This document shows positions 11,011 to 54,254 of a DNA stretch of 64,000 nucleotides, in pieces. A program made the translations under genes and the position numbers. This stretch comes from Macrostomum lignano (lineage: Eukaryota): the NCBI GenBank assembly GCA_002269645.1, contig NIVC01002721.1:82577-146576 (forward strand). Reading direction: 5' to 3'. The notes below the pieces were generated by a model that made no database searches, was not told the DNA's origin, and was given only the letters and a program-made list of their open reading frames with translations. Position 1 is the stretch's first letter; every line of letters begins with the position of its first letter.

Positions 11011-11336
11011 AGAGGTTTAAGTGGGTTCATAAAAATTCTTTAAAAAATCATAAAAATTCTTACAGCAAACACTTAAACAGAAGTTACAATATATGTACCT
11101 GCGCCATTTTATAAAGTGATGGCTTCCTCAGTGTCATGTAGGATTCTTCTATTCTAACTTAGTTGTCTACAAATCATTTGAATATAGACTACTAATATCA
11201 GTAGTAGATAAAGCGTCATTCCACTCTACTCTTAATTCGATTCATGAGTGTGTCTTTCTGTCTTAGTGTTTGTCTTTCCGTCTGTCTGTCTGCTGACTAC
11301 TGTACAATAAAATCAAAAAACTTTCCAGCGCACCAT

Positions 11337-13420
11337 ATGGCAGCCGCCAAGCCAAAAGTCTCCAACCCGCTGAGCCTGAGCCTGCCAGACCGGGCACTCA
11401 GCGGCATCCTGCGCTGCCTGGACCTGCGCAGCCTGGCCGCCTGTCGTCTCGTCTGCCGCGCCTGGCTGTCTCGCATCGACGCTTTTTGCAGCGGCGGCGC
11501 CTGCGTTGGTGGTGGCTTGTTGACCGCTGGTCGCGCCGTCCGTCAGCTGTGCGGCGGCGGCAGCAGTGCAAAATCGCCGACCGCCTGGCAGGCGCTGCAG
11601 CTGTCTAGACGGTGCAGCTTGGTGTGCTCCACGCTGAAAGAGACGGACGTGCAGTGCGAGGAGGAGCTGCTGCCGAGCCTGCCGGACCTGCAGCTGCTGC
11701 CCATGGTGAGTGCTCGGCGCTCGCTCACAAATCAATGCTGCAATATTGTGTGGCTATAAGAAACGAACCAGAAAATGCGCAGCTGGAAATTTAAACTACT
11801 TATAGTAGGTTTCAGTCTACCATGGGGGCCATGGATTTTATGGTGGGGGGGGGCAAAGTAAGGAATTCTACATGACTAAGTTCCTACATAATTTTGAGAA
11901 TCGGTGTTGTTAGCACTCGTTTTGGCGCCGCAGGCACTTATTTTAGCGCCACAGACATTCATTTTAGCGCCTCAGGCACTCATTTTAGCGCCGGAGACAC
12001 TGAGACACTCATTTTAGCGCCGGAGACACTGAGACACTTATTTTGGCGCCCCAAAGCAAAATTATTGATTTCCATAGCATTTAAATGTCCCTCCTATAGC
12101 TTTCACTCGGTGGGGAGTCGGGGACATGCCCCCCCTGTCCCCCCGGTGGCGACGCCCCTGCGTGAAAGTGAATGACTCTTGTACTTGAGGTCCCAAGTTC
12201 GAGCCCCTATGCTCGTCGCAAAGTTTCCTACGTAACACCGTTTGCAGTCGGACAAGGGCGGCCGCGGCCGCCTGATGCTGCGAACTCGGATGCTGGACCG
12301 TGGCCGCTGCCGCCTTATCAATCGGCTACTGAAAGTGCCCCAAATACCCGAGGATGCCGAGTGCAGCTTGAAGTTCTGCGCCACCTCCTGGATCGGTCTG
12401 GTCATCTGCCGCTTCAACGATGGCACATGCGTGGTGACGCTGCCGCTGAGGCCTGGCGACGGCGGACTGGGCGGAGACGAAGTGCTGACCCAGGCGGTGA
12501 TCAGCCCGCCTATATCCGGCATTTTCCCTGTTGTCATGGCAACGCACAAGTGCGCCAAGTGCGGCCAAGACCAGCTGCTGGTCTACAGTATGAGCTTGGC
12601 TGCGCCCCAGCTCAGCCTGTGGTCGCTGCCGCCCGCCGCCGACTCGTTCGGCAGGTCGCCGCAAGTCATCGGCAAGCCGCACAGCGTCCTGCAAAGTGGT
12701 GTCGTGGGCAGCGATGAAGAGGCCCTGCGGATGCTGCAGGTGGCGTCGCCTGTCGAGTCGGAGTTTGCCGTGTTCGCCGTGATGAACAGCAACGATGAGG
12801 ACACTCTGACCACCGTCAGCTTCGTCCGCGCCGGGTGCCGCCAGCTCAGCCTCCTCCGCAGCCGCATCAGCCTGGGCGGAGACGAGTGCGGCTTCATCAC
12901 GGACTCCAGCGACGGCGTCCTCGTCACCATGGTGATCGACGGCCTTCGCCGACGTCGTGGACAGGCTCGCTGTCAGCTGAGACTCCGAGTGACTCGTCAC
13001 GTGCTGGCCGGACCGAAGTGCACTGTGTGTCCAGAGACCTTCCTGTACAACTGCCCGATGCCGTCTGCTGAGGTGCCCGAATCCCAGCCTAAGCTAATTG
13101 GCCACGGCAGGCAGCTGCTGTGCGTGACCTTCATGGTGCCGCACTGCCTGGCTCTGTATCGGCCGAGCTGTCCGCAGCCTCCGGTCGTCATCGACCTGCC
13201 CAACGACCAGCCGTTGCACTTTCTGTGGCCGGTCGGCAACTGGCTGAACTGCGGCATCGACCCGGAGCGGCAGAGCTGCCCGCTGCTGGTGTCAGCTGGC
13301 ATGGAGCGAGATGAAGCAAACAAACAGAGCCACCTGCTGAGCTTGAGCTTCTCTAAGGATGCTCCGCAGTCAGCTGTGTGGCAGCGGACTGTGCAGTTTG
13401 GCAGCTCGGTTTCTGAGTAA
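11337..13420 (+). CDS. F-box protein with unrecognised C-terminal region, two exons (11337-11705, 12248-13420), ~513 aa
   Basis: N-terminal LPDRALSGILRCLDLRSLAACRLVCRAWLSRI fits the F-box consensus; phase-0 intron ATG|GTGAGT...TTTGCAG|TCG; open 391-codon exon 2; paralog 3 kb downstream has the same intron position. Confidence 0.8.
11821..12160. mobile_element. Probable MITE remnant in the F-box intron
   Basis: Degenerate inverted ends (CATGGGGGCC... / ...GACGCCCCTG), internal ATTTTAGCGCC repeats; absent from the paralog's shorter intron; no TSD found. Confidence 0.4.
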
Positions 13421-17129: not shown

Positions 17130-17411
17130 GGCAATAGATTATTACACCTACCCCAGTTGGACCAGATGTGCAACCGACAGCTCAGCCACAGTTATTGCGC
17201 GGCGCATCTGAAGGCTGCTTTCGGCTGTGTCAGTTCGCACACCCTCAATTACCTCAGCTAATGCCAGTACAGCTGGGTGAACTGCAGCAATGCAGAGTTA
17301 AGCAAGTGTCTTGCTTGCTCAAGGACACAAACTGTTTCAGTGGGATCGAGAATCGAACCCCCGACCTTCAAGTCGCGAGTCCGACGCTCTAAACCACTAG
17401 GCTACAATCCC
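17130..17411 (-). mobile_element. tRNA-derived SINE with V/Meta-type central domain
   Basis: Minus strand starts GGGATTG-TAGCCTAGTGG (A box)...GGTTCGATTC (B box), with an imperfect cloverleaf, then TGTGTCCTTGAGCAAG(CAAG)ACACTT, typical of V-/Meta-SINE cores, and an AT-rich tail. Confidence 0.7.
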
Positions 17412-23736: not shown

Positions 23737-24306
23737 CTAACAAATGCCTCCAAGACTCAACGACAGCTCATATTCCATCCCGCCGCCACTGTTCAAGTGC
23801 CTGCCCAGCTGTAGAGGATGGTTAATCTCAGTTATCTGTCGCGGCCACTCAGTCTTGACAATCCTGATGGAGCTGTCCGCAATTACTCGTCGTGGCGGCA
23901 GCTCGTCGAACTCCATGGTTCTCTCGCCAGCTTTGAGACAGTTAATCAAGCCGCCAAGTTCTTTGTCCGTCTGTATGTGGCCTATCCGTGTGCCGTTGTC
24001 GATGATAAACATCAATTCGCCGATGTACAACTGGACAGTAATGCGACTATACTCTGTAGCTGCGATGGTGACTTTATGAATAGTTAGCCACCACCATTCG
24101 ATGTTGTCTGGGCACAGAAAGTCAGCAACTGCTACAGCTGGAAGTAATTGAAGACAGCCCAGCAACACCAGCAATGAACACGAGCTGCACAATGCAAGCT
24201 GCACGATTTTAGTAGGCTGAAATGTTGTCATTGTTATATATTGGTCCATAAATATATATTTGAATTCTGCCCACAAAATCAGCACCTAAAACCCTATACT
24301 TACCAT
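23737..24306 (-). CDS. Small secreted protein, family member A (exon 1 ends in ATG 24306-24304; exon 2 24216-23737; ~160 aa)
   Basis: ATG|GTAAGT...CATTTCAG|CCT gives M-PTKIVQLALCSSCSLLVLLGCLQLLPAVAVA (signal-peptide-like), then CPDNIEWW...LQLG-x17-GGIC*. Confidence 0.75.
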
Positions 24307-24600
24307 ATCAAACGGCAAAGCTTTGAAGTGGCAATGGAAAACTTGCGTCTATGAAGAAAAATTCATTTTAATTTTACGCTCTAGTATAATATTATATGTA
24401 TGTGCTGATAAGTGAAGTGGTATACACTAGAGCGATGTCAAATTCAAAAATAAAATTTGTTTAAGCGATTGTCTATCTATGGCTTTTGTACATTGCATCG
24501 AATGTACTTTTCATCTATGCGTCTAAAAATAGCGAATGAACCTACCTTGACCACTAAAGTTCCACTGAAAGTCTTGTTGTAAAAAGTTATCTCGAAAAAA

Positions 24601-26539
24601 GGGGATGTCAACTCAAGCACCAGAATGGAGCCCGAAGTTTAGCTCCAGACCAAACCGACTGCAATCGATAACTTCTCGGCCCAGATGACTAGAATCGCCG
24701 AGACATCCCATCCGGGTCTCTTCCTTGGGGTCCCAGGGGATAAAGGGGATAAAATGGGGATCTCATGTCAACTTAAGGCTCTAGAATGGAGCCCAAAGCA
24801 AGGCTCTAGACCAAACCGACTGGAATCAGCAGATTAGACATTGTTATCGAGAACTCAATGGCAAAGTACAATCGGGCACATCCAGGTTTTGAATCATTGA
24901 AACAGCTGCCACCGTCATGGACAGGGCTATCGTTGTTCGAATTCCGTTAGAATTTCATGCGCTGAGTGTTCTTGTCCAACGAACTGGACGAAATTGAGCA
25001 GCTGCACTTCAACGGCGATCTGACGCGAGGGCTAACTAACTCCTCTGCTAACACAAGGGCATGGATTTCCGTCAATCCGCTGGTCCAAGGGCATGGAGAT
25101 CCAAAAAGCTGGGGGTTCCCCCGAATTCACACAGAGAATTTGACAGAGGTTTCGGTGGGTCCGTATCAACTAAATCAAGCCGATGATTACATTCAAAACA
25201 TTCGTGCCAAAAAGGTTCTCGGTAGCTATACGAAGGTGACTCCTGAAGAGACTTTCAGTCGCTCACATCCGAACATCTGAGCCACCTGAAGTGTTGGAAG
25301 TTTCGGCAAGAGTCGTCCCAGTCAGAAAACTGAAACAACCTATTCGGTCGGTGGCATCCGTCTTGGATTTTTCTAGCTGTCGTTTTCTCGCGCCATAATT
25401 CGAAATCTTACCACGTGATTCTTAGAGTGTGTGACAGCAGCGGACAATCGCTTTGGTTTTAGAGATCCAGGATTGCAACTTCCTCATGGCTACTATTCGT
25501 CTGCAAAAGCTGGAAATACGACTGCAGGCTGCGATTGTCATGTAATGGCAGTGCTCAAACTCCTGGGCTGCTACGCTTAACCACCAAGATAGCTATCGAA
25601 GGTCTGGTGCTAGCCTTCGCTTTGTTGATTCCGCTCTTCCACGCAACGCAGGCTTGTTGCCAGAATTTATACCAGAGAAAATGCTTTACCACAGCAGCGA
25701 AAGCCTACTGAGCAACAGTCTAGCAGACAGCATGAGGAGTTTCAGTCAGCCAGCAGCAGCTCACGATCCAAGCCTCAGCCTTCAAGACTCTTTGGTCTTC
25801 AAAACCATGGTCAGCAGTGCTATACGCAATTGTTGTTGCACAACTGTTTCACTGCATCAGCAGCGAAGTCCAACTCCTTCAGCCGGTCAGAGGTAGAGCC
25901 GTGAACACCGCAATGACCAACCTGATGACATCTATGGCGACTGGACCAGCAAGCGTAGATCAACTTGTCAAAGCTATCCGAAGCCGATATCCGCAGCCGT
26001 TGTCGCCAAGACAGCAACACTCCATGAACGAGGTGCTACAGTGCATTCTGTCAGAGTTGCAGCTGCAGCGTCATTGCCTAATCGAATTTACACTAACTGT
26101 ACGTGCGGTAGTTGCCTGATTAGCACGGAGGAGCTGCTCATAGGAGTTCTGGATAATTGTATCCTCAGAATCTCCTTGCAGGAGTTTTCAACCACACTGT
26201 TAACTCTATACTGTCTCTACGCTGCTTTTACGTCACCAAAGCACGTCCCATGCACCAACACCAACTATGCAGCTGATAGTGCGCTGGAAGTTCAAGTCTC
26301 TAACGGCAGAGTGACCCTGATGCAGAGTGTCCGGAGCTGAACTTCGGGCTCCATTCGAGAGCCTTAAGTTGACATGAGATCCCCATTTTATCCCCTTTAT
26401 TCCCTGGGACCCCAAGGAAGGGACCCGGATGGGACGTCTCGGCGATTCTAGTCGTCTGGGCCGACAAGTTATCGATTGCAGTCGGTTTGGTCCGGAGCTG
26501 AACTTCAGGCTCCATTCTGGTGCTTAAGTTGACATCCCA
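24601..26539. mobile_element. Defective DNA transposon with ~220-bp TIRs; transposase remnants on + strand (PHIS/ISL2EU/Spy-like assignment tentative)
   Basis: 24601-24830 is the reverse complement of 26326-26539. Internal fragments GFPRIHTENLTEVSVGPYQLNQADDYI and GYYSSAKAGNTTAGCDCHVMAVLKLLGCY resemble the C-terminal SWIM-like region of DDE_4-type transposases. Flanks are AAAAAA | TTTTT with no TSD. Confidence 0.75.
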
Positions 26540-26681
26540 TTTTTCTTGTTCTCTCTTCTTTTAAAGTCGTTTCGAAAGAAACAGAAAGCAAATATAATCA
26601 GTTTATGTTAGACTTCAACTTAGTTCGCAACACAGCTTATAAAACAAAAATTTAGAAGCAAAAAAGCAAAGTCTCGAAGGA

Positions 26682-28115
26682 CTAGGATTCCGTGTAAATG
26701 CGTAGAAGAAATTCCAATCGCTTGCCATTCAGCGGCGATTCAGTCTGTGGCACCACCGTGTAATCACCTGGCGGCAGGGACACGCGGAACACTACCGAGC
26801 GCTGGTTGTCTTCGGGGTGTTGAGCCACCTGGTACACGGGTCGCCTCAGACAGTTAGCCCCTTTATAGATGTCAACAGCTTTGACAGAGAATCGTCGCTT
26901 TTCTAGCGGAATGTTGCGCTGCCCCGGCTCTTCCAGACTGATCACAACGGTGGCAACTCCGTCCTGATTGCTTCCATCGCAAAAATTCGTCAGGAACGTG
27001 TTGTCCTCGAAGAATTCGTCAATTTTTTGACCTGGATACCACTCTCCGTAGATGTACTTGCCGTTCCACTCGGCTCCCGTCACGCCGTTGTCCAAATTTC
27101 TAGCCAAATGCAAAACTGTCAGGAACTCGAAGAACTTCATAAAGTCGGACAGCTCCATCCAGTTCTCACCGTCGTCCTGCTTCACTAATCCAGCTAGCTT
27201 CATCTGCTCGGGAGTCCACCTGGGATCATTGTCGTTCCATTTGCCGCGCCATTCAAATTCGCTTAGCGGCCCCCAGGGATTGCAAATCCGGATCAGATCC
27301 ACCAGTTTGCCATTGTGCGGGATCTGCACTGTGCCTGTGACGATGTATTCGTGACCGGACGTCAATCCAAGGCTCTCGAGGTTTTCGCCCAGAATTTCGG
27401 TGTGGGTAGCCGCACCAGCGGACAGTTTTTTTGATAGGCAATACTTAATGTTCTCCAGCACCTTTGCCCCGTCCTCCCGCTTGAATGGGATCAACTCGCA
27501 CACTCCACCGGTGAGGTCGGCCATGGCCTCCAGCTCGAGCCCGCCAATTAGAGACTCATAGCATCCGTGCAGCTTAGCTAGCGCCTTCTCCAACAGGCAG
27601 ACCCAGTACTCGCCCTCGTGCGCCGCGGCGTACACAAGCTGGCCGTCCTTGGTCGGCAGCCGATCGTCCACCATGATCTCCACTTCGCGTCCAAATGGTC
27701 GGAAGCGGAACCGGAAGGCGCCGCAGTAACCTGCACCGCTCAGTGTCTGGTCAGGAAGGATGACCTGGGACAGTAGGTCCGGTCTCTGCGTGATGGCAGC
27801 AACAGCAGCCAAGATCCAGCAGTTCTCCAGTTCGCCTTGATTTATATCAAATCGAGAGAAACCATCTTTGACGAACTCCGGGTCAGCGTCGAGTTCTTTA
27901 GGTCGCAGCCACTTGTAATTGAGCTTCTTGTGAGCATAAGTTAGAGAAGTGTCGTCGGCAGGAAATTCCGGATCTTCAAACAGCCTTTTGCTAGCTCGAA
28001 GCTCCCGGATTATCTCATTGTTCTTTTCAACGTTCAGAGTTATAAAATTAGTGGTCGACACTCGAAATTGAGAGCAGCTTGCAGTAGAAGGTCTCCAAAA
28101 CGCCTCTTGCTGCAT
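26682..28115 (-). CDS. Intronless calpain-family cysteine protease (CysPc + domain III, no penta-EF-hand), triad intact, ~477 aa
   Basis: FEDPEFP, WLRPKEL, DINQGELENCW (Cys), VDDRLP, CLLEKALAKLHGCYESL, GHEY (His), ICNPWG (Asn), WMELSDF; ends after the C2-like domain (PGDYTVVP...EFLLRIYTES). Confidence 0.9.
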   Translation of the reverse strand: MQQEAFWRPSTASCSQFRVSTTNFITLNVEKNNEIIRELRASKRLFEDPEFPADDTSLTYAHKKLNYKWLRPKELDADPEFVKDGFSRFDINQGELENCWILAAVAAITQRPDLLSQVILPDQTLSGAGYCGAFRFRFRPFGREVEIMVDDRLPTKDGQLVYAAAHEGEYWVCLLEKALAKLHGCYESLIGGLELEAMADLTGGVCELIPFKREDGAKVLENIKYCLSKKLSAGAATHTEILGENLESLGLTSGHEYIVTGTVQIPHNGKLVDLIRICNPWGPLSEFEWRGKWNDNDPRWTPEQMKLAGLVKQDDGENWMELSDFMKFFEFLTVLHLARNLDNGVTGAEWNGKYIYGEWYPGQKIDEFFEDNTFLTNFCDGSNQDGVATVVISLEEPGQRNIPLEKRRFSVKAVDIYKGANCLRRPVYQVAQHPEDNQRSVVFRVSLPPGDYTVVPQTESPLNGKRLEFLLRIYTES

Positions 28116-28729
28116 GACGTTTGCGAGCAAACTACTAATAAAATCTGTACAAAGATTAGAAAAAGAGAAGATTATCTCTATTCTCTTTTGAATCAGGGCT
28201 GGGTCTTCTTGAACCCGAGTTCCAACTTATTTGCACATTAAATGGGCAAAAAATATATTTTTCACTGGGCAACCGTATAGTCTATGGAAAAAGTCAATCA
28301 ATGCTATGCAGTAGAACACACGTCTGAACCATTTTAAAAATAGCAAAAAACACAAAATATGAACATAAAATAAACGCAGAGCAAATCAAGTTTAGATGGT
28401 GTGAATTGATCACATCCCAGATTAATGCGAGTATAGATTTATTGATATTGAAGAATACACCAGGTACAATAGTACGACCTACATTGTATAATTGGCTACA
28501 TTGTATAATTTACCAGCTACGAGTATATCTGTTACTGGATAAATTAGCTCTAATGTTAAAGGGCAACTTTATATTTTAACTTTTGCAATAACCTTTGCAA
28601 TGCACAGACTGTGGAGACTGTGACAAAAAACGCAGTTTCGAAAAACCTGCCTAACAAACGAAACCGATTTTGATTCTACGAAGTTAGATTGAACGATTTA
28701 AACAAAAGGCGTGCATATAGTCGTGTATA

Positions 28730-30940
28730 AACAATATGTATTAGGACGCAAAGGGAAGGCCCCTAGCGCGCACGCGCTCGCAGAACAGCTAGGTGGGAGG
28801 GGCAGGCAGCAGCAGCCTGAGGGATCAGCTCAAGCGCCTGCAGGTCAGCGATGAGGCAGTCCTAAAGGCAGTGGCCCAGCAGCATCTGACGGCGACGGCG
28901 CAGGGTATCTCTCAGGGACTTCTAGCGCGGGCCATCAGAGCGTTGGTCGGCAGGCGCTTCGGGTCCAGGGCTGGCTTTCGCAACTCGGTCAACGGCACAG
29001 CCTCCATGCCGTACAGGAGGATCGGCTCGACGGCCGCGCGGAACAGGCGCACCTTCAGGTCGTCTCCGGCAGCTGAATTGAAGACGTTCCTGAGGAGGTG
29101 CGCGGCGCGCCATAGCCTGATTTCTTCTGTAGGAGACAATCGCATTGGGATTCATTACCAGGGCGCCGAGATACCGCGGAAGTCCTCGCACACCTCGATG
29201 CGGTCTCCATTGGGCAGCTTAAGGGTTGGGACGGTATTCATGCCCACGTGCAGCGCCTCCGTCTTGTGAGCAATTACCAGCAGCCCAACACGGGCGCCCT
29301 CGTCGCAGAGCCTTGTGAGAGCTCGCTGGGCAGCAGCTGGAACGCGGCAGAGCAGTGCGATACGCGAGAGAGGGAAGCGAAACAGCAGGGTGTCTGGAGC
29401 TTCGGCGCGTGGACCCAGCAAGTAGCTGTCATCCTCGCGGAGGGCCCGACGAAGCACGTAGTGCATAACCACGGGGAAGAGCAGAGTAGCCAGCGTGTCG
29501 CCCTGAAGGACGCCTGCATGGGCTGGTGCCGAATTCTTCTGTGAGGCCATCGCTCGACATGACAAAAGCCCTGGAGTCGTGGTAGAGGTCCATCACCACG
29601 CTCACCTCGCTCACCACCGCAGCATGTACGCCATAATGAGATAGAAGCCACGCCTGGACACCGAGTCAAAGGCCTTGCGATCTAAGCGCCATCTGAGCGC
29701 CTGGGACACCCTCCTTTGCCGGAAAAGACAGGCGGTTTCACTTCATCTGCGTCTATGCTCCAACGGCTCCCCGGACCAGCGAAGATCCATCCGTGACAGA
29801 AGCCCTTTAGGACACTCTGGGCTGCATGCTTGATTCCATCCCTGCTCGTGACGATCTATCATTGTTGCTGGTGACTTCAACTCGCCATCCAGTTTTATCC
29901 AGGCCAGAGATCTGATGGCTGTCAATGGCACCATGCGACAGCGCTTCAGCAAGCTTCCAACTTTATTTGGCCCCAACGGGCGAACCACTCGGCTGGACTG
30001 GATTTTCTGCCCCGAGGTCCAGGGTGAGCAGAGTCCTCAACATCCGCCCCGACTGCGTTCAATCTGATCACCGCCTGATGGCATGCGACTTCGATCTGCA
30101 CTGGCAGAGACTCCCGTCTGCGCCACCTCACCCGCTCTGGGCCGACCTGAGACACCCGGACACGCGGCAGGCCTTCCTACTGCTTGCCACTACTCCTGCT
30201 CTAGCGCAGTCCTTCGAGTCTTTCCATCACGCCGTCGAGGATGCTGCAGCGCTTCTCCCACGGAGGCAGGCAAACCCTCCAAAGGCCCTGTGGGACCGCA
30301 ATCGCATCATCTCCCAGGCAAGGCGGCATGTGCAGAGCACTGCTGCACTCCACGGCCGTGACAGCAACCAGGCCAGTGCTGCCAGGGACGAGCTGCAGTG
30401 CATCTACGCCCAGCGGACTGAAGCCTGCCTGCATCAAAGAAGCTGTGAGCGAAATCCAACTCGCCACTGACAACTGCCGCCATAGTGCTGCCTGGAGAGC
30501 CATCAACCAGCTGACTGGCAGGAAGCCCAGGCCTAACACCATTGTTGGCGCTGATTCCACCGAGCACCGCAAGGCCCTGCTGGCCACCCACTACCGCGAG
30601 GTGCTCAACGCGCCCGCTCCAACTGCGCCTCTTCTGCCGATCCCAGCTACTTCGCTCCAGCTCAGCCAGGCCCTTCAACACCGGCCCCCATCACCGTAGG
30701 CGTAGTTGACCGAGCACTGAGGACCATGCGAGCTGATGCTGCCGCTGGGGTGGACGCCGTCCCTCCCAGGGTCCTGAAGCTGCCCGAGCTCACCCCAATC
30801 TTCACCAACCTGATGAACAAGCACTGCAGCCTTGGAGGCAACGAGGCCGCCTCCTGCCCAGCCTCAACCAGCTGCTGCTGAGCTTCCAAAGCGGCTTCTG
30901 CCCGGACAGGTGGACAGATGAGCAATTCACAGTATTCCTT
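28730..30940. mobile_element. RTE-like LINE copy with inverted 5' part (3' RT half on - strand 28730-29683; endonuclease-to-RT half on + strand ~29685-30940)
   Basis: - strand: RKAFDSV...GVLQGDTLA...LFRAAVEPILLYG. + strand: ICVY...GDFN...PTLFGPNGRTTRLDW...SDHRL...KLPEL...FQSGF...EQ. Both halves align with the uninverted copy at 49.3-52.2 kb. Confidence 0.85.
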
Positions 30941-31144
30941 CATCCATGACCGTAGCTACGAGTATGTACATTTTTATTTTTAGCTTTTGTTTAACACGCG
31001 AACTTCCATATAGTCTTTGATGTAAAGCCAGAATGCCAATGGGAAGCGAAACTTGTTAGTCTTAATTAACGAACCCAAAACTTGTGTTTGAAATCAAGAT
31101 CTTTCATCCCTCGACTTTGTCGTTTTTCGTTAAAAAGACCAATA

Positions 31145-31729
31145 ATGGTAAGCGCTTTTGCTTCAGTGACAAAACTGTATTGATGCCTGTATGTCTTCAT
31201 TCATTGACGCAATCAGTTTCAGTTTCAGGCTCAGCACAAGTTGCTGAAGAGATCAACAATATTTGCTGTCATCGTCATTCATCTATGCTTGATAATTACG
31301 CCATCAAACAAAGCCTTAGGCAGACGAAGAGATCAAGAAGAGTTGACCTACTGCAAAGGCAAAATGCGCTGGTGGGTCATAGTCAGACAGAGGGTGACAC
31401 TGTTCGCTAGCAACTTCGGCGGCGCCAAAGCTTACATGTATTTTAACAGGATTTTGCCTCCCAGTGGCTTACTGCAATGGCACAGTTATGAAATGAGACG
31501 CCATGTTGCTCCAAATATGGGCGCAGATGTGGTGTTCCTGGATAAAAATCACTACATAGTGCCAGCTTATAGCTACTATCGACTGCGTCGAATGGCCAGG
31601 CTTCGTAAAGGCTCATTCAACGAGATCAATGGTCACCTGCTGCTTGGTAGTCACGTTCACATGTACCATTACATGAGGTACGAATACACTACCGTAGACG
31701 GTGGCAGCTGTGGCGACACATTCACTTAG
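31145..31729 (+). CDS. Small secreted protein, family member B (exon 1 ends in ATG 31145-31147; exon 2 31229-31729)
   Basis: No in-frame ATG in the long ORF, but AATAATG|GTAAGC...TTTCAG|GCT supplies it (81-bp intron): MAQHKLLKRSTIFAVIVIHLCLIITPSNKALG-RRR...CKGKMRWW...LLLG-x17-GGSCGDTFT*. Confidence 0.75.
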
Positions 31730-33254
31730 TTCTCTGGAGATTGAAGAGCTCAGACCAGCTCGAACTGTCTAAATTTCTTCTGGGAGTCTTTCTTGAGTGC
31801 GCTTTGAGTTATTCGCAAAAAATACATTTAGTATATGAAAATTCAAAACTTTCAATTTTATTAACTCATTTTTGAGTTTCGATTGTTAATTTTCATTTGA
31901 TATAAAACGGATCAGTTTGGAGACACTTCGATTTTGTAGCTACTAGTTGTGTCAGACTTTTGCTGATATTTGTAGAGATTCATTAAGTGTTACATTTAGT
32001 ACTTATAATCTTATTATAGAAATAAGACCCCGTTTATGTCTTAGTCGAACGTTTTTTTAAGATTCTCTGTAAATTCAAAGCAGAAATTCCAGCCTCTAAT
32101 TGCAGTTGCCATCTCAATGCGGCGAACGCAAGGACTACTCTAAGTAACATAGGACTCGAAATCTATAGTAAATGTTTTGAAGGCAACTTCGCCAAAAAAT
32201 ACACTGCAGAGATAGGAGGTTTTAATTTTTTCAGCACAAACATTTTTATTGCTTTTGAAAGGAGGCAGATCCAGTGTTCATCTTTTGATATGTTGTGCCT
32301 TTCTTATTGCTCTATCGATATTCATAAAGCTTTTCGTTCAGAAATAGTTTTAAAGGCAGGTTTCACCGAAAAAATACACTACGGAGATAAGAAATTTCAC
32401 GATTTTCAACACTAAACCAGAGATTGGGTCTCTTAACAGTGTCAGAGAAAGTTCTAATCACACTATTTTGTGCCCCACATGCTGCTCTAACTACGGATTA
32501 ATCGATTTTTCTTGTTTAATAGGTCTTGTCATTATTTTAAACGTTTTTTTCAAGTGAATTAGATTTATAATTACTTGCTTAACATGTTGCAGATTGTACT
32601 TTTTGTTCGAGAAAATCATTTTTTTTCTCACAAAGGAGTCGGTATTCTTAATGCTACAGATTCTTACATGTACTGCTTTATTAAATTTGTGCAGGATCGA
32701 GGTCTGCGGTACCCTGACACAAAGCCTTCGGCGAATTCATTCAACAAAAGCACTGAATAAATTTTTGCCCATTCCGCTGACTGCTGAGTACACGATCACA
32801 CGGTGTGTTCAACGGCCCTGACCTTCTAATCGTCAGGAATGTACACTATACTCTCTGTGGAGACTGGCCCTCATTGTTGTAAAAAGCACGACAACCCCCA
32901 GGCGGATGTTGCCCTCCCCAGCATGAACACTTTAAATAAATTATCTTCAGACACTCGTTAGATAAACAATGAAAAAGTAGCATATTTTTCGAGATTTTAA
33001 AATTAGAAACTTGCAAACTAGAATAAAGTACGGGTCTTTCTAAAAAATGCTGTGATGGTCAGAAGTTGTTGCAAGAAACTGAAATAATGTTATAGCAGTG
33101 AGAGCATTCAACTCAAACTATTTGTTTATGGCATTTCCCTACAAGCAAGATGAAGCAATCGGTTGAAGTTATTTGCTTATAGTTAGATCAAATCGGAAGT
33201 TCAAATATTAGGAGACTATTGTCGTCATAATTAATCTTGGTAGCTTTTAGAAAC

Positions 33255-33740
33255 ATGGCACTGCGATCAAGCAGTTTGCTGCGAGTATTGCTGCTGCTCA
33301 GTCAAACATTCAGTTTTGCTTGGCCCACTGACACCTCAGTCAGGCATTGCAGAACGAATTCGCACTGGTTGAGATTTAACCTCATCAGCCTGGAGCTTTG
33401 GCCCGATCCGGCATCAATCTCGGCGCCAAAGGCGAGCCTGACCTATACAACAGTATTCAAATGGAGCAGCCTTGACGACAAGACCTACCTGAAATTGGAA
33501 CACCTCCCACTGCCAGATCCAGCCGAGATCAACGGAGTGTACTATTTTAAGCTGAACCAACGACAATACAGATCGGTCAGAAGAAGTCTCGCCAACTTGA
33601 CTGTCAGTTACAATTCGATGTCTGGGCAGGTGAATCGTTACCTGGAGTTCCCGATCGAAATCGGCAGTCAAAGATTTCAAAATTACTGGATTTCAATTAT
33701 GTACTTTTCGGCATTTGGCGGTGTATGTCCTCTCTGTTAA
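33255..33740 (+). CDS. Small secreted protein, family member C (~161 aa)
   Basis: MALRSSSLLRVLLLLSQTFSFA signal-like; CRTNSHWL...IEIG-x17-GGVCPLC*; TTTTAG acceptor 4 nt before the ATG. Confidence 0.75.
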   Translation: MALRSSSLLRVLLLLSQTFSFAWPTDTSVRHCRTNSHWLRFNLISLELWPDPASISAPKASLTYTTVFKWSSLDDKTYLKLEHLPLPDPAEINGVYYFKLNQRQYRSVRRSLANLTVSYNSMSGQVNRYLEFPIEIGSQRFQNYWISIMYFSAFGGVCPLC

Positions 33741-34059
33741 TTTTTTTGGGTTAATGCGCTCCATCTCGAGTGCTACTTAAAGTATATGACTTCTTTGCTG
33801 CAATCTGTAAACATACAATCGTATAGTCAGATATATTAGATATTTATATATATATATATATATACTCGTATAATGTAACATAATATATATTATGTTACAA
33901 GTCATTTCACCCCTCCGGGTGGCACCAAAATAAATTCACAAAACGTTCATTAAATAAGCTGCCAAGTTCTGAAGAATTTCTAAATAACTTTAGTAGATTA
34001 GCAATGCCCTCATAAAGTTTAGCCATTGTCTTATTTGTCTGAATGCTTGAAATATTGTA

Positions 34060-34252
34060 GCGGGTCGCCATCATAAAGCCGAAATATCATAACTCCGAAA
34101 ACCAAAATAGCGGTTTGCGTTGCTAACGCTGCCGGAGTTATGATTTTTCGGGTTTATGATATTTCAGGTTTATGGTATTTCGGGTTTATGATGGGCGTTG
34201 CTACATGTATATCGGTATTCGAAGTTGTGATTTTTCGGGTTTGTGATGCTCC
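34060..34252. repeat. Short palindromic element (ATCATAA..CCGAAA subrepeats and their reverse complements), probable MITE remnant
   Basis: CATCATAAAGCCGAAATATCATAACTCCG versus CGGAGTTATGATTTTTCGGGTTTATGAT. Confidence 0.45.
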
Positions 34253-34477
34253 CCATTGTGCTAGTTAAAAATCCATTTTGTTACACAGTCAATAAGCAAT
34301 ATTAAGTGAATATTATTGATAACTTTAAACATTTAACTATACCTTTACCAGTTTTGTGATGCCGTATGCAGTTAAGCGCTGCGTTACCCTTAGGTTAGCA
34401 ATAAAGGTTTAGTACAATAGCAGAATCTTCAACAGATAAACAAGACAACAGCACTATAACAAAAGTTCACCAACACT

Positions 34478-34875
34478 TTAGTTCCCCAGCACTTTAGTTC
34501 CCCAGCACTTTAGTTCCCCAGCACTTTAGTTCACCAGCACTTTAGTTCCACAGCAGTTTAGTTCCCCAGCACTTTAGTTCCCCAGCACTTTAGTTCACCA
34601 GCAATTTAGTTCACCAGCACTTTAGTTCACCAGCACTTTAGTTCCCCAGCACTTTAGTTCCCCAGCACTTTAGTTCACCAGCACTTTAGTTCCACAGCAG
34701 TTTAGTTCCCCAGCACTTTAGTTCACCAACACTTTAGTTCACCAGCACTTAGTTCACCAGCACTTTAGTTCACCAGCACTTTACTTCATCCGCACTTTAG
34801 TTCACCAGCACTTTAGTTCACCAGCACTTTAGTTCACCAAGCACTTTAGTTCACCAGCGCTTTAGTTCTCCAGCA
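34478..34875. repeat. Minisatellite, 16-bp unit CACTTTAGTTC[AC]CCAG
   Basis: About 24 tandem copies. Confidence 0.95.
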
Positions 34876-35330
34876 CCGATAAACTGAACTGGCTTTGTTG
34901 AAATTAAGTTCGACATTTCCCTACTTTACTGGAAAACCCATACTTAACGTGTCAAAAGCAAGTAGTGCAAGGAGTGCAAGTAGTGCAAGTCCCAATGCAA
35001 ATCCAGAGTGAAAAAAAAACACTTTTGCCAGCATTTCCACCGGTAGATATTCAACATTTATCCGCGCTTTTTGAGATATTGAGCAACACATGAGGATCTG
35101 ACATGGAGTAGTTCGTATCCAGATTTTAGGAAAATCAATGTCTTTGAACCATGAGCTCTATAGCATTGGGACACTCAGATAAAAAGTATCTGGACTTTTT
35201 ACCATTACGCCATATACTCGTAATGGAGCATTGGGGTGGCAAAGTGCCAAAATTACAAAGAAAAAGTCGAAAGCTACCGTCAATAAAATAGTTTTCATTG
35301 AAACAGTTAGTTATTTACCTGTTAGCGCAG

Positions 35331-36035
35331 TTATTTCAAGCAGATTGGACACAAGCCACCTTTTCTTGTATGGTATGTGTAGGACATATTCTTAATGCTT
35401 ACAGTGTGATAACCAAGAAATATCTTCACTTTCATTCTGACCACTTGACCGGACCAATCAATCAGCGAGATTCGCGCGTAACTGTCCGCCAGAACAAAGA
35501 AAATATTTTTCTTGCCGTTCATAAATGTCCGACCATTGAAAGAGCGCTTTTGTTCCAGACGCATTCGCTGCTTGGTGTAGCGCACCAACGTCAGTGTGGA
35601 GTGACTGTCGTCGTTCTGATTTGAAACTTCATAAAACTCCACGTAAGCTGCATCCGTATAGGAAATTTTGGATTTAACGTAGAGAACATGCGCAACGAGC
35701 ATCCAGTATTCGGTACCATCCTCACAGATCTCGTGCCCCAGAACATAACTAGCCGGCAGCAAGATGGACTGAGATACAATGATTGCCACCAGTATACGGA
35801 GTATTGTGATCATGGGCGACGACATCTGGGTGGATTGGTAAAACAATGGGTGGCTTATTGCCTATGCGCGTGAAGCTTTGAGGTAATGTCAGGCTATTTT
35901 AGTACATCGGCATGCGTTTATTGTCGAGTTTCAGGCTTATGGTAGACTATGGCATGTTGTTGAATCAGTAATACTTGTTAGACTTTGTTCTGAATTTCTA
36001 TTATTCTGCAACAGACAGAAGAGAAAACTTACCAT
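35331..36035 (-). CDS. Small secreted protein, family member D (exon 1 ends in ATG 36035-36033; exon 2 35825-35331)
   Basis: GCGATG|GTAAGT...CACCCAG|ATG TCG; ITILRILVAIIVSQSILLPASYVLG signal-like; CEDGTEYW...IFLG-x17-GGLCPICLK*. Confidence 0.75.
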
Positions 36036-36166
36036 CGCAAACAGCGGCACTGACCCTGGGTGTGTCTAAAAAGCCTAAGCATTGCTGATTCCTTAGCGTT
36101 GGTTTCTTTTAGAAGTTTACCCATAGAACATGTAACTTCAGCGCGTTTTTCCAATCTACTCTAATC

Positions 36167-36384
36167 CATGGATGAATGAATAGAATGGATTGCTATTCTG
36201 GCTCTGGCTATTTTCGTTTTTGACTCTTTTGCATCCGGTTCCCCACCATTTCGGTTTTCCGCCGAAAATTGTCTATGGCAATCATCAACCAATGAAAAGG
36301 CACGGTGGGGAACCGGATGCAAAAGAGTCAAAAACGAAAATAGCCAGAGCCAGAATAGCAATCCATTCTATTCATTCATCCATG
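36167..36384. mobile_element. hAT-type MITE (218 bp) with ~80-bp perfect TIRs
   Basis: CATGGATGAATGAATAGAATGG...CCATTCTATTCATTCATCCATG; exact 8-bp TSD CTCTAATC; explains the mirror-image ORFs at 36161-36390. Confidence 0.9.
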
Positions 36385-36564
36385 CTCTAATCTGCTACAT
36401 GGCAGGTGATTCCTTTAAATTTCAATCAAAAGTCTAATTTAAATTATAATTGAAAATGAAACTATAATTTAACAAAAGGCGAAAACTTTATTTTGTAAAT
36501 GAAGGAACAACTGAGGGAACGTAAAAGCTAGTTGAAATTCAATCCTTGCTAACAATCCCAAGGA

Positions 36565-37950
36565 TCACGTGAACACTCGAAGCAAAAACTCCACCCTGTT
36601 GCCTTCAATCAGGGTCTCAATGCGAGGAATGACAACATAATCGCCAGGTCGCAGACTTGCTCTTGAAACAAATTGTCTTTCCAACTCCGTTCCCGTGAAT
36701 CGCATCAAAGGTTCGCCTTCGGGCAACTTTCCCGGATAAATTTCAATGATTTTCTTGGCGAATTCCGAGCCATCAGGGTACAGATGGCGTCGTTCGCCCT
36801 CTTCCAAACTGATAATGACGTACGCCGACCCATCCGGATTTGCTGACGCACCGGAAACGGTAAAGCTGAAGCGGTCGTCATGATAGAACTCATCCGGACC
36901 CTGGTTCATCGTCCACGCTCCGTAGACCTTCTTGCCAGTCCACTCTGACCCGGTCACGCCGCAGTCTAAATTTCTGGCCAAATGAAGAATTTGAACGGAC
37001 TCAAACATTTGCACGAAATCAGACAACTCAATTGTAGTTTCACCTTCTGTAGCATTGGCTTGCAACTGGTACCAGTCGGATGACAAGCGGGTATATTCTT
37101 GATCTAGCAAAGCTCTTCTATAATCCAAAATCTTCACAACATCGATTGAACTGCCGTCCCGTGGAACCTGAGCAGTGCCGCTAATAATATAATGGCCTCC
37201 TGGCGGCAGGTTGGGCAATTTTTTCATGCATTTTTCAGCGTCATCGCTGCTTTCATTGCGTGCACAGAACGCTTCAACGATCAGTTCCCGTTTTAAAGCT
37301 GACTGCAATATTTTCAGTAAATCGTCCACCTTGATTTCTCTTACATAGATTTCTTCGCAAACTCCACCAGTGAGTAGTGGCAATAGCTCTAACGATGCGC
37401 AAGTTGGTACATCTTCGTATGAGCCGAACAGCTTGGCAAAAGCCTTCTCGAGTAGGCACAGCCAGAACTGGCCACGGTGAGTTCCGGAAAACGCTAGTTC
37501 CCCGTTTATAGTAGGGAGCCGATCGTCAATAGTGAGCTCAAATTCTTGGCCAAATTGGCGAAAGATGAAGCGAACAGAGCCGTCATAGTTCTTGCCGTGC
37601 AGTGTCTGACCCGGTGGAATAACGCTGTGTAAGAGGTCCTGCCGATTTCCGATTTGGGCTAGACATAGTAATAAGCAATAGTTGGCACTTTGACCTCTGA
37701 CGTTCGCGTTGAATCCCGACCCGACGTTAACGTCTCCGACCTCGAACAGTAGTGCTGTGCCATTTCCGGTCATTTCGTGCGGCCTTAGCCAGACTAAAGG
37801 TTTAGAATGGTATCTTCCTGATGTCGAATGGGCCTGATGCTCATCATCCTGTCCGGCATGTACAGAACTGTAATCGGCTGGAAATTCCGGATCTTTAAGC
37901 GGCTTTTCTCCGGGTTTCAGCTTTTTAACCGCTTTGAAAAGTCTCTTCAT
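36565..37950 (-). CDS. Intronless calpain-like protein, predicted catalytically inactive (461 aa)
   Basis: Paralog of 26682-28115 (DPEFP, WLRPHE, IDDRLP, CLLEKAFAKLFGSYE, LHLARNLDCGVTG, EFLLRVFT). The triad positions read RGQSANYC, PGGHY and ILDYRR. AATAAA lies ~75 nt after the stop. Confidence 0.85.
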   Translation of the reverse strand: MKRLFKAVKKLKPGEKPLKDPEFPADYSSVHAGQDDEHQAHSTSGRYHSKPLVWLRPHEMTGNGTALLFEVGDVNVGSGFNANVRGQSANYCLLLCLAQIGNRQDLLHSVIPPGQTLHGKNYDGSVRFIFRQFGQEFELTIDDRLPTINGELAFSGTHRGQFWLCLLEKAFAKLFGSYEDVPTCASLELLPLLTGGVCEEIYVREIKVDDLLKILQSALKRELIVEAFCARNESSDDAEKCMKKLPNLPPGGHYIISGTAQVPRDGSSIDVVKILDYRRALLDQEYTRLSSDWYQLQANATEGETTIELSDFVQMFESVQILHLARNLDCGVTGSEWTGKKVYGAWTMNQGPDEFYHDDRFSFTVSGASANPDGSAYVIISLEEGERRHLYPDGSEFAKKIIEIYPGKLPEGEPLMRFTGTELERQFVSRASLRPGDYVVIPRIETLIEGNRVEFLLRVFT

Positions 37951-38479
37951 TTTTTCAGTAGAGTTGGTTTAGTCAAACATACTGTCGTATCTACCTCGAT
38001 AAGACTAAGAGATAAGAATGAATAGACAACAAGCTTTTATCAAAATTTAGTCTATGGAAATGAGTATCACATTTAACTGGCGCTCGCTAAGGTCCCGGGT
38101 TCGATTCTGCAGTTTGCGAACGAAAACGTACCATTATACCAGTCAATCTTCAAACACAAGGTGTGTACCTGCCTGGCAATGAGATGAGCAATGAGCTAAA
38201 GTACTAAAACAAAATGCTAAGTTTGTCAGTAGCTACAATATTAAGATTCATTTTTCAGTTTACCGAGCATAATTATCAAACAGCCGCTTCAAGTCAGTAT
38301 AATTGACGCTACAAGCTAGATGTAAAATTGTCCTTGGTTGCTGCGAATGATTCTCCAGCAAACTTCACCGTTTCATCCTAGTGGTAACAGAAACGTCGGT
38401 ATGTTTAAAAAACGCTTGGCAACATGCCATCAGCTTACAACTCAGAAGTCACAGCTCGGGTTCTACAACTGAGGAGTCG

Positions 38480-52960: not shown

Positions 52961-54254
52961 ATGTCTGTTGCGTATTCCGACATAAAACTCTATTTGCTTA
53001 GTGGCGCATACGACGTCCCTGTGTCTTTAACAACAACTAAGGAGAAGAATAATTTCAAAAGCAAGGTTCGGCAAAAGGCGCGCAACTTCAAGTACGAGGG
53101 CCAGCAGCTGTTCTATCAGCTCTCAGCTCGGGATGATAATCAGAAGAAGCGCCATCGGTCAAGGGAGCGTCGCCTGGAGGTTGAAGAACAAGAAGAACGG
53201 AGTCGATTAATTCAAGAGTATCACACCTCTGCGACTGGAGGAGCTCATCAGGGGATAAAGTCCACCCTATCGAAGCTGCAGGGACGATTTCATTGGGACG
53301 GCATGACGAAATCTGTGCAAGATTACGTTCAGAAGTGCGCCGTCTGCCAGCGCAACAACAAGAGGGCCGTGGCGAACGAACCCCAGTTGACGCCAATTTT
53401 GATTCCTTCGATGGCCGAACGAGTATTCGGTTTTGTCTGCGTTGACTACGTCAGGTTCGAGCCATCTTCGAAAGGTGATTGTTTAATCGATTAATAGCTT
53501 TTGTGGCTACGTGTATCAAATCTAAGTAGCATACTCTCATTCATTTTAATTCATTTTTATTGACAAGAGACGAACCTCTGCTTATCACCCCCAGGTTAGT
53601 AAAGTTAATATTTTTTTGCCTTCCATGCTCTCAGTAATAAGTCTTAATTCGAATAAGTTCATATTCGATATTAAAGAACTGACAATGCTCTTTCAGACCA
53701 ACGGTCAGTGCGAGCGCCTCAAACAGAGCTTAGTCGCAGCTCTGCGCAAAATGTGCGACCAGGACTCTGACTCTGCGGCATGGGATGATTATGTCGATGG
53801 CGCAGTTCTGGCGTACAACAGTCGCGTGCACTCGACAACTGGCGTCTCGCCTTACAAGGCCGTGTTCGGCAACGAACCACGACTTCCCCATGACAGCATC
53901 GGACCAGCAGACGCTGCCATGGTCGGTGACGTCACGATTCGTCATGTAGAGAGAAAGTCCGAAGCACGTGGGCGGACCATTGAGTTGATGCGTCGACGCA
54001 TCCGTCGGGCGCAGCAAGCTATGCAGCAGTACCATCAGCAGCGTCTGGCGTCTGCCAGCAGCCTCAGCTTCAAAGTCGGAGACAAGGTGCTGCTGCGGAA
54101 CTTCGACCGTGACGATCGGAAAGGCGGCAAATTGAAGACACCATGGTGCGCCAAGGTTTACACGGTCGAACGTGTCCTAAGCAACAACCTGTACCGACTC
54201 GAGGGGAGATCTACAGCGATCAATGGCCGCCACCTGAAAAAATACCACGAATAG
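52961..54254 (+). mobile_element. Intron-containing Gypsy-type integrase without gag/RT (Ginger/GIN-like transposase), internally deleted
   Basis: Met start; YL..G.Y N-terminus; HHCC finger (EYH...GAHQG...CAVCQ); VDY (first catalytic Asp); donor at 53475; remnant exon RRTSAYHPQ (53568-53594), 102-bp GT-AG intron, then TNGQCER...WDDYV...AYNSRVHSTTGVSPY...VGDKVLLR (GPY/F-like). Confidence 0.75.

What the first reader, a model, noticed from the sequence alone, without database searches (positions are those of the whole stretch)
23737..37950. Twice-repeated tight calpain-to-secreted-protein gene pair
Seen: on the - strand, calpain 2 (37950-36565) is followed by member D and calpain 1 (28115-26682) by member A. 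Removing the intervening insertions (218-bp MITE plus TSD; 1939-bp TIR element) leaves only ~300 bp and ~440 bp between calpain stop and the next ATG. Calpain 1 and member B are also head-to-head, ~0.8 kb apart once the LINE is removed. Inference: an old two-gene cassette was duplicated and kept despite extreme divergence of both partners. This suggests co-regulation (possibly dicistronic transcription) of an intracellular protease or pseudo-protease with a secreted partner, such as a secretion, wound or defence module. This is the best candidate for an undescribed system in the window.
Basis: partly seen in the sequence, partly recalled or inferred. Interest (0 to 1): 0.78.

Follow-up and report, generated by a model that had tools for sequence, protein, structure and literature searches.

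The report
Duplicated calpain plus orphan-secreted-protein gene cluster
In the flatworm Macrostomum lignano, two intron-less calpain genes (one catalytically dead) each sit just upstream of a small secreted protein from a tiny orphan family; this is real, but it looks like one old local duplication, and nothing shows the pairs are transcribed or regulated together.

Summary
The window is Macrostomum lignano contig NIVC01002721.1. On the minus strand, calpain 2 is followed by member D and calpain 1 by member A. After removing a 218-bp MITE plus its 8-bp target duplication, and a 1939-bp TIR element, the stop-to-ATG gaps are 303 and 436 bp. Other copies of the locus in the same assembly lack these insertions, which proves them.

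A-D are a real but tiny orphan family: signal peptide, all-beta fold tentatively C2-like, conserved Cys pair. A profile search of 1.84 billion proteins found only A, B, C and one further protein. Calpain 1 keeps the Cys/His/Asn triad. Calpain 2 has lost it.

A/D and calpain 1/calpain 2 are each other's best matches, so one cassette duplication is the simplest history. That is a single event, not two independent pairings.

Dicistronic transcription is not supported. A, B and D share a 5' mini-exon ending exactly in the start ATG, and B has no calpain upstream. An annotated transcript of A starts inside the spacer, not at an AG acceptor. An unlinked calpain paralog has no family member within 10 kb. 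The pairs meet the published M. lignano operon distance rule, but trans-splicing could not be tested. Interest is low to moderate.

The parts
23737..24216 (-). Member A, exon 2 (codons 2-160 plus stop). Gene Mlig004263.
   Evidence: M + this exon is identical to annotated protein P0001. pN/pS is 0.19 against the contig 4424 copy.
24217..24306 (-). Member A: start ATG (24306-24304), which is the last 3 nt of exon 1, followed by an 87-nt phase-0 intron (24303-24217).
   Evidence: ATG|GTAAGT donor and ...TTTCAG acceptor. The splice is confirmed by annotated proteins P0001 and P0010.
24601..26539 (.). 1939-bp non-autonomous DNA transposon with 216-nt terminal inverted repeats, inserted in the calpain 1 -> A spacer.
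   Evidence: Inverted repeat arms 24596-24811 and 26329-26544, 92% complementary. Empty site at L002:11577/11578. None of the three of its ORFs scanned matched Pfam.
26682..28115 (-). Calpain 1: 477 aa, intron-less, protease core plus C2-like domain III, no penta-EF-hand domain. Cys/His/Asn catalytic triad intact.
   Evidence: Pfam. Alignment to human m-calpain 1kfu. 12 synonymous and 0 non-synonymous differences against the other two copies.
28750..30955 (.). Degraded non-LTR retroelement fragment between calpain 1 and B. Boundaries are approximate.
   Evidence: 67-70% DNA identity to the element at 49.7-51.9 kb, which carries an RVT_1 ORF. Reverse-transcriptase-like ORF remnant. Present in all three copies.
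31145..31729 (+). Member B (Mlig010399): ATG 31145-31147 ends exon 1, 81-nt intron 31148-31228, exon 2 31229-31729. 167 aa.
   Evidence: ATG|GTAAGC donor. The model matches annotated protein P0002/P0006.
33255..33740 (+). Member C (Mlig022872): single coding exon, 161 aa.
   Evidence: Identical to P0003. Linked to the family through D (z = 8.6) and through the shared signal peptide, N-terminal Cys and C-terminal GGxC motif.
35331..36035 (-). Member D (unannotated): ATG 36035-36033 ends exon 1, 207-nt intron 36032-35826, exon 2 35825-35331. 165 aa.
   Evidence: ATG|GTAAGT donor and CCCAG acceptor, in frame. ORF intact in all three copies. Exon 1 region 100% and intron 98-99% identical between copies. 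The splice itself is inferred by homology with A and B.
36159..36392 (.). 218-bp MITE (36167-36384) with 81-nt perfect terminal inverted repeats, flanked by the 8-bp target duplication CTCTAATC. It lies in the calpain 2 -> D spacer.
   Evidence: Absent from both other copies of the locus.
36565..37950 (-). Calpain 2 (Mlig027602): 461-aa intron-less ORF, protease core plus C2-like domain III. The catalytic Cys, His and Asn are not conserved, so it is a predicted pseudo-protease.
   Evidence: Pfam. Alignments. pN/pS 0.20. It is annotated as only 304 aa because of a 70-nt intron at 37043-36974.

Best explanation
This is a lineage-restricted six-gene cluster in Macrostomum lignano, built by local duplication. 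In window order it is A<-, calpain 1<-, B->, C->, D<-, calpain 2<-.

History (inferred). An ancestral neighbouring pair, an intron-less short calpain followed about 0.3-0.4 kb downstream by a small secreted beta-sandwich protein gene, was duplicated once as a unit. This gave calpain 1/A and calpain 2/D. Member-only duplications gave B and C. Calpain 2 then lost its catalytic residues but stayed under purifying selection as a pseudo-enzyme.

Transcription (inferred). Each member gene is most likely transcribed from its own promoter in the short spacer. Its first exon ends exactly in the start ATG and is cis-spliced to exon 2. On this reading the tight calpain-to-member spacing is inherited from the single duplication and is not evidence of a dicistronic unit.

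What is shown: the gene models, the family relationship, the insertions and empty sites, the loss of the triad, and the constraint between copies. What is inferred: the order of duplications, independent promoters, and secretion.
For: - Organism and copies.
- Cassette duplication: A-D are reciprocal best matches. Calpain 2's best relative is calpain 1. The two calpains share an intron-less structure and indel pattern that P0009 lacks.
- All six ORFs are intact and gap-free in the three copies, while non-coding DNA carries indels. pN/pS is below 1 for five of the six genes and uninformative for D, which has too few substitutions; calpain 1 shows 0/12.
- Own first exon: ATGGTAAG occurs only 4 times in the 64 kb on both strands, and 3 of these lie 90-210 nt upstream of exon 2 of A, B and D on the correct strand. 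B has this exon with no calpain upstream on its strand.
- P0010 places the 5' end of an A transcript model about 58 nt upstream of the ATG, inside the spacer and not after an AG.
- The family is confined to this locus. No member lies near the unlinked calpain paralog.
- Recent transposon insertions are tolerated inside both spacers.
Against: - Both pairs meet the repeat-adjusted 1-kb distance rule used to call operons in M. lignano (PMC8629364).
- The calpain 2 -> D spacer and the D intron are as conserved between copies as coding sequence, 98-100% with no gaps. However, synonymous divergence is also low in that part of the locus.
- D is unannotated even though calpain 2 has a transcript model. 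That could mean D lies inside the same transcriptional unit.
- No RNA data could be examined, so a shared precursor RNA or co-expression is not excluded.
Confidence: 0.6

Rival explanations
1. Operon-like dicistronic units. Calpain and the downstream member are transcribed as one precursor RNA and separated by 3' end formation plus SL trans-splicing, as in annotated M. lignano operons.
For: - Same strand, with repeat-adjusted gaps of 303 and 436 bp, below the 1-kb operon threshold. About 15% of M. lignano genes are estimated to be in operons, and repeats inside operon spacers are common (PMC8629364).
- An AATAAA lies about 75 nt after the calpain 2 stop, followed by pyrimidine-rich AG sites just upstream of the D mini-exon.
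- D is unannotated although the neighbouring calpain 2 has a transcript model.
Against: - The downstream genes have a cis-spliced first exon, shared with B, which cannot be in a calpain operon.
- The A transcript model on contig 4424 starts at a non-AG position and reads through the candidate acceptor unspliced.
- No [T/C]TNCAG trans-splice motif was seen directly upstream of the exon 1 of A or D. This is from reading the sequence, not a formal scan.
- Only 24% of trans-spliced M. lignano genes lack a human homolog, and this family is such a gene (PMC8629364).
Confidence: 0.1
2. A co-regulated functional cluster without shared transcripts. The calpains and the secreted proteins are expressed in the same cell type through shared enhancers or a shared chromatin domain, and they act in one pathway, for example a secretory or gland cell, wound or defence programme.
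For: - All four family members in the annotated proteome lie within 12 kb of the two calpains.
- The arrangement has persisted while the proteins diverged to 22-37% identity.
- The pseudo-calpain is under constraint.
- The family's tentative C2-like fold and the calpains both belong to protein classes usually tied to Ca2+ and membranes. That last point is general knowledge, not a test made here.
Against: - There is no expression evidence of any kind.
- Clustering is what tandem duplication produces by default.
- There is no conserved acidic Ca2+-binding motif in the family alignment.
- There is no sequence link between the family and calpain domains (hhalign probability 0.2%).
- A cytosolic protease and a secreted protein are in different compartments.
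Confidence: 0.2
3. The 'members' are not real genes but chance ORFs in repeat-rich DNA.
For: No Pfam hit. D is unannotated. Pairwise identity is very low.
Against: - A, B and C are annotated from transcript-based models whose splice junctions match mine.
- The ORFs are gap-free and stop-free in three copies that diverge by 2-23% in flanking DNA. pN/pS is mostly below 1.
- They share a signal peptide, a Cys pair and a gene structure.
- There is an independent homolog, P0004, at E 8e-12.
Confidence: 0.02

Closest known systems
SL trans-spliced operons of Macrostomum lignano (Wudarski et al. 2017, PMC5730564; Ustyantsev & Berezikov 2021, PMC8629364)
   Same: Same-strand neighbouring genes. Repeat-adjusted intergenic distance is below 1 kb. 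Transposon insertions sit inside the spacer.
   Different: The defining trans-splicing of the downstream gene is not shown. The downstream genes carry a cis-spliced 5' mini-exon. Stop-to-ATG spacers of about 300-440 bp, which include both UTRs, compare with a modal transcript-to-transcript distance of about 100 bp. The downstream genes are orphan, non-conserved genes.
Non-classical calpains (protease core plus C2-like domain III, no penta-EF-hand domain) and catalytically inactive calpain-like proteins
   Same: Both genes have Peptidase_C2 plus Calpain_III domains. Calpain 1 has the full Cys/His/Asn triad. Calpain 2 is an inactive homolog under constraint.
   Different: They are short (461-477 aa) and intron-less. 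They are specific to this locus and only 30-43% identical to the nearest other M. lignano calpain found (Mlig005442).
Extracellular C2-type beta-sandwich domains (perforin C2; the N-terminal C2 of Delta/DLL4/Jagged)
   Same: Two independent AlphaFold models of the family give an all-beta sandwich. Their best Foldseek matches are C2 domains, including these secreted ones.
   Different: The matches are marginal (E 1e-3 to 1e-2, TM 0.4-0.55). There is no sequence or Pfam match and no conserved Ca2+-binding acidic residues. The proteins are stand-alone 130-aa domains with a conserved N-terminal/C-terminal Cys pair.
Ordinary tandemly duplicated gene clusters
   Same: Paralogs of two families are interleaved within 14 kb. 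Reciprocal best-match pairs are consistent with duplication of a two-gene segment. One copy has become a pseudo-enzyme.
   Different: Nothing essential differs. This is the category the evidence best fits.

Membership tests
Calpain (Peptidase family C2) | Calpain protease core domain (Pfam PF00648) | tested here: met
   Calpain 1 scores E 6.6e-87 and calpain 2 E 1.1e-38, both nearly full length. PDB calpains match calpain 1 at E 1e-71.
Calpain (Peptidase family C2) | Catalytic triad Cys-His-Asn | tested here: met
   This row is for calpain 1: NCWILAA, SGHEY and ICNPWG align with C105, H262 and N286 of human m-calpain. Calpain 2 does not meet this feature; see the next row.
Calpain (active protease), calpain 2 only | Catalytic triad Cys-His-Asn | tested here: not met
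   Cys->Tyr (NYCLLLC), Asn->Asp with loss of the PWG motif (ILDYRR), and Gly in the His column with a His one residue later. Calpain 2 is a calpain homolog but is predicted to be inactive.
Classical calpain | C-terminal penta-EF-hand domain | tested here: not met
   Both proteins end with domain III (PF01067, 26.3 and 24.0 bits against a cut-off of 21). There is no EF-hand hit.
M. lignano operon (criteria of PMC8629364) | Adjacent genes on the same strand, with repeat-adjusted distance of 1000 bp or less | tested here: met
   303 bp (calpain 2 -> D) and 436 bp (calpain 1 -> A) from stop to ATG after removing the MITE and the TIR element. Criteria taken.
M. lignano operon (criteria of PMC8629364) | Downstream gene is SL trans-spliced | not testable with these tools
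   No RNA-seq or SL-read data were reachable. Indirect evidence points against it: the cis-spliced mini-exon, and the transcript model P0010, which starts at a non-AG site in the spacer.
C2 domain | Eight-stranded beta-sandwich fold matching solved C2 domains | tested here: inconclusive
   C2 domains are the top Foldseek matches for both models, but at E 1.3e-3 or worse and TM 0.3-0.55. Model pLDDT is 73-76.
C2 domain | Sequence-profile match and conserved Ca2+-binding aspartates | tested here: not met
   No Pfam hit at E 0.1 or better. No PDB sequence hit. The only invariant residues are Cys, Ser, Gly, Gly and Cys.
MITE / TIR DNA transposon (the two spacer insertions) | Terminal inverted repeats, a target-site duplication, and an empty site in a homologous locus | tested here: met
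   MITE: 81-nt perfect inverted repeats, 8-bp target duplication, absent in two copies. 1939-bp element: 216-nt inverted repeats and an empty site in L002. Its target duplication was not resolved.

The most novel reading that the evidence does not exclude
The calpain/pseudo-calpain genes and the orphan secreted C2-like proteins form a flatworm-specific functional module. They would be co-expressed from operon-like or shared-promoter units, and the cytosolic (pseudo)protease would control production or release of the secreted membrane-binding partner, for example in gland, epidermal or wound-response cells.
Probability: 0.08. Interest if true: 0.55.

Novelty: new member of a known kind. Interest (0 to 1): 0.25.

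Why it matters
As it stands, this is a well-documented example of a lineage-specific tandem cluster in a recently polyploid flatworm. It adds:
- an uncharacterised orphan secreted family with an unannotated fourth member;
- a constrained pseudo-calpain;
- dated transposon insertions.

If the pairs turned out to be co-transcribed or strictly co-expressed, that would link a cytosolic Ca2+-dependent protease lineage to a secreted protein family, and it would give a compact test case for how operon-like units arise from duplication in flatworms. The existing M. lignano SL-read and poly(A) tracks could settle that quickly.

Tried and rejected
1. Mini-exons derived from the spliced leader. Local alignment of the 35-nt SL to the 42 nt ending at the ATG of A, B and D scored no better than shuffles. 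No SL-like sequence occurs in the window.
2. Family derived from the calpain C2-like domain. hhalign probability 0.2%.
3. Known-domain assignment for the family. No Pfam hit and no PDB sequence hit.
4. More family members.
   - The word-indexed search found only A, B and C.
   - The full HMMER search of 1.84 billion representatives added only P0004, plus one spurious repeat protein.
   - The metagenome scan found nothing.
   - No further member lies in the window or in any fetched locus.
5. Transcript evidence.
   - Exact look-ups of D and of the full-length calpain 2 found no record.
   - No Logan RNA contigs exist for the family.
   - Text searches for the gene ids and searches of the supplements of four M. 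lignano papers found nothing.
   - The run accession of P0004 appears in no paper.
6. The bacterial-type promoter and terminator scan is irrelevant for a eukaryote and was ignored.
7. No residual homology was found between the two calpain upstream regions or among the members' upstream regions beyond the ATG|GTAAG junction.
8. Rfam found nothing in the region.


Full report
**Source and copies.** The calpain 1 protein is encoded exactly on two contigs of GCA_002269645.1. Proteins from the locus carry the names 'BOX15_Mlig... [Macrostomum lignano]'. The window is 100% identical to NIVC01002721.1. The assembly holds three copies of the locus, on contigs 2721 (the window), 1642 and 4424. They are 77-100% identical depending on the segment, as expected for this recently polyploid genome (PMC10733133, listed).

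- Calpain 1 (26682-28115, -) and calpain 2 (36565-37950, -) both have Peptidase_C2 and Calpain_III domains. They are the only calpains in the window.
- Member A lies downstream of calpain 1, and member D lies downstream of calpain 2.
- The MITE (36167-36384) has 81-nt perfect terminal repeats and an 8-bp target duplication. The 1939-bp TIR element (24601-26539) has 216-nt terminal repeats.
- Both insertions are proven by empty sites. The MITE is missing from both other copies, and the TIR element is missing from contig 4424.
- Without them, the stop-to-ATG distances are 303 and 436 nt.
- The calpain 1 and B start codons are 3029 nt apart. About 2.2 kb of that is a degraded retroelement with a reverse-transcriptase remnant, present in all copies.

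**Gene models.**
- A, B and D share an unusual structure. Exon 1 ends exactly in the start ATG, followed by GTAAG and a phase-0 intron of 87, 81 and 207 nt.
- My spliced models of A and B equal the annotated proteins.
- ATGGTAAG occurs only four times in the 64 kb on both strands, and three of these are these junctions. The structure is therefore inherited, not chance.
- C uses an ATG in its single coding exon.
- D is not annotated in any copy, yet its ORF is intact in all three.

**The secreted family.**
- All members have an N-terminal hydrophobic segment and no other one.
- All have a Cys at the start of the mature part and a C-terminal GGxC motif.
- Shuffle tests on the mature regions give z = 13 (A-D), 8.6 (C-D), 6.2 (A-B) and 5.5 (B-D).
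- There are no Pfam or PDB sequence matches.
- A full HMMER search of 1.84 billion representatives found only A, B, C and one 153-aa protein, P0004, from a Logan assembly of SRR29421764. P0004 is most similar to B and A. Its 1.7-kb contig has no calpain in the 978 nt upstream.
- Two AlphaFold models (pLDDT 73 and 76) are all-beta sandwiches. Their best, but marginal, Foldseek matches are C2 domains, including the extracellular ones of DLL4/Delta and perforin.
- There is no sequence link to the calpain C2-like domain.

**The calpains.**
- Calpain 1 keeps Cys, His and Asn.
- Calpain 2 has Tyr for the Cys and Asp for the Asn, and its His is displaced by one position. It is a predicted pseudo-protease.
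- The two are 37% identical. Calpain 2 is 30% identical to the unlinked paralog Mlig005442, and calpain 1 is 43% identical to it.
- Both are intron-less, and they share indel patterns that Mlig005442 lacks. Mlig005442 has introns.
- Calpain 2 is annotated as 304 aa because of a 70-nt intron inside the ORF. However, its C-terminal 159 codons are 45.6% identical to calpain 1, more than the N-terminal part, so the 461-aa ORF is the conserved product.

**Constraint.** All six coding regions are gap-free and stop-free across the copies, while the flanking DNA carries indels. pN/pS values are:

| Gene | pN/pS |
|---|---|
| Calpain 1 | 0 (12 synonymous, 0 non-synonymous) |
| Calpain 2 | 0.20 |
| A | 0.19 |
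| B | 0.14-0.46 |
| C | 0.29 |
| D | uninformative, too few changes |

**Interpretation.** A-D and calpain 1-calpain 2 are reciprocal best pairs with the same orientation and spacing, so one duplication of a two-gene cassette is the simplest history. That makes the 'twice-repeated' pairing a single event. Adjacency is then the default outcome and does not demonstrate selected linkage. No independent replicate exists:
- the family is confined to this locus;
- the unlinked calpain paralog has no member within 10 kb;
- the only foreign homolog has no calpain immediately upstream.

**Dicistronic transcription.**
- The pairs meet the published distance rule for M. lignano operons, which is 1 kb or less after subtracting repeats. 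The defining requirement, SL trans-splicing of the downstream gene, could not be tested (PMC8629364).
- Indirect evidence points to independent promoters.
  - The ATG mini-exon is shared with B, which has no calpain upstream on its strand.
  - The 5'-partial CDS P0010 shows an A transcript model beginning about 58 nt upstream of the ATG. That is about 350 nt after the calpain 1 stop, at a non-AG position, and the model reads through the nearest candidate acceptor.
  - The mini-exons are not SL-derived.
- Points that keep the operon reading alive.
  - The calpain 2 -> D spacer and the D intron are as conserved between copies as coding DNA, although local synonymous divergence is low too.
  - D is unannotated next to an annotated calpain 2.

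**Verdict.** There is no positive evidence for co-transcription, co-regulation or a functional module. The finding is a new, uncharacterised instance of an ordinary kind of feature, a tandemly duplicated lineage-specific cluster, with some modestly interesting details.

Noticed in passing
window 24299-24306(-), 31145-31152(+), 36028-36035(-): In A, B and D the first exon ends exactly in the start ATG, followed by GTAAG. These are 3 of only 4 ATGGTAAG occurrences in the window. The layout mimics the M. lignano spliced leader, which ends ...GCATG|GTAAG, but the exons show no sequence similarity to it.
   Followed up: yes
window 36974-37043(-): All three copies of calpain 2 are annotated as 304 aa because of a 70-nt GT..AG intron inside the ORF, which shifts the frame (protein ends TEEI*). 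The 159 codons skipped are better conserved against calpain 1 than the N-terminal part. This is likely a minor isoform or an annotation artefact.
   Followed up: partly
window 35331-36035(-); L001:619-1146, L002:674-1201, L007:11864-12391: Member D is not annotated in any of the three copies in the assembly, although its ORF, intron and mini-exon are intact and 98-100% conserved.
   Followed up: partly
window 23737-28115 versus L001/L003 and L002: Relatedness among the three copies is mosaic. A is identical in the window and contig 1642 but has pS 0.07 against contig 4424. Calpain 1 is identical in contigs 1642 and 4424 but differs from the window by 12 synonymous changes. This suggests recombination or gene conversion between homeologs or haplotypes.
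   Followed up: partly
L005 979-1440 (Logan contig SRR29421764_182325): This is the only family homolog found outside the M. lignano annotation. It is 153 aa, has its own ATG and no intron, and is closest to B and A. The source organism is unknown. The flanks are AT-rich and transposon-like, with no calpain within 978 nt upstream.
   Followed up: partly
window 34464-34876: A 16-nt tandem repeat array (AGTTCACCAGCACTTT, 25.8 copies) lies in the C-D tail-to-tail spacer. Alignments to the other copies are staggered, so its length probably varies between copies.
   Followed up: no
L006 10001-12235 versus window calpains: Calpain 1 and calpain 2 are intron-less, whereas the unlinked paralog Mlig005442 spans 2235 bp for 495 aa and so has introns. 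The locus calpains may descend from a retrocopy.
   Followed up: no
window 17341-17411(-) and about 38085-38125: Rfam reports a tRNA hit (30.8 bits) that ARAGORN does not call. A tRNA T-arm-like fragment (GAATCGAACCCGGGACC) lies upstream of calpain 2. Both are probably tRNA-derived repeat remnants.
   Followed up: no
window 11244-11759(+), 50294-51223(-), 52961-53494(+): Elsewhere in the window there is an F-box ORF, a reverse-transcriptase ORF (the relative of the retroelement fragment between calpain 1 and B), and a retroelement integrase zinc-binding domain.
   Followed up: no
window 28116-28223(-): The annotated calpain 1 CDS on this contig (P0013, 513 aa) is 5'-partial. It reads through 108 nt upstream of the ATG without splicing, so the calpain 1 transcript starts at or beyond 28223.
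   Followed up: no
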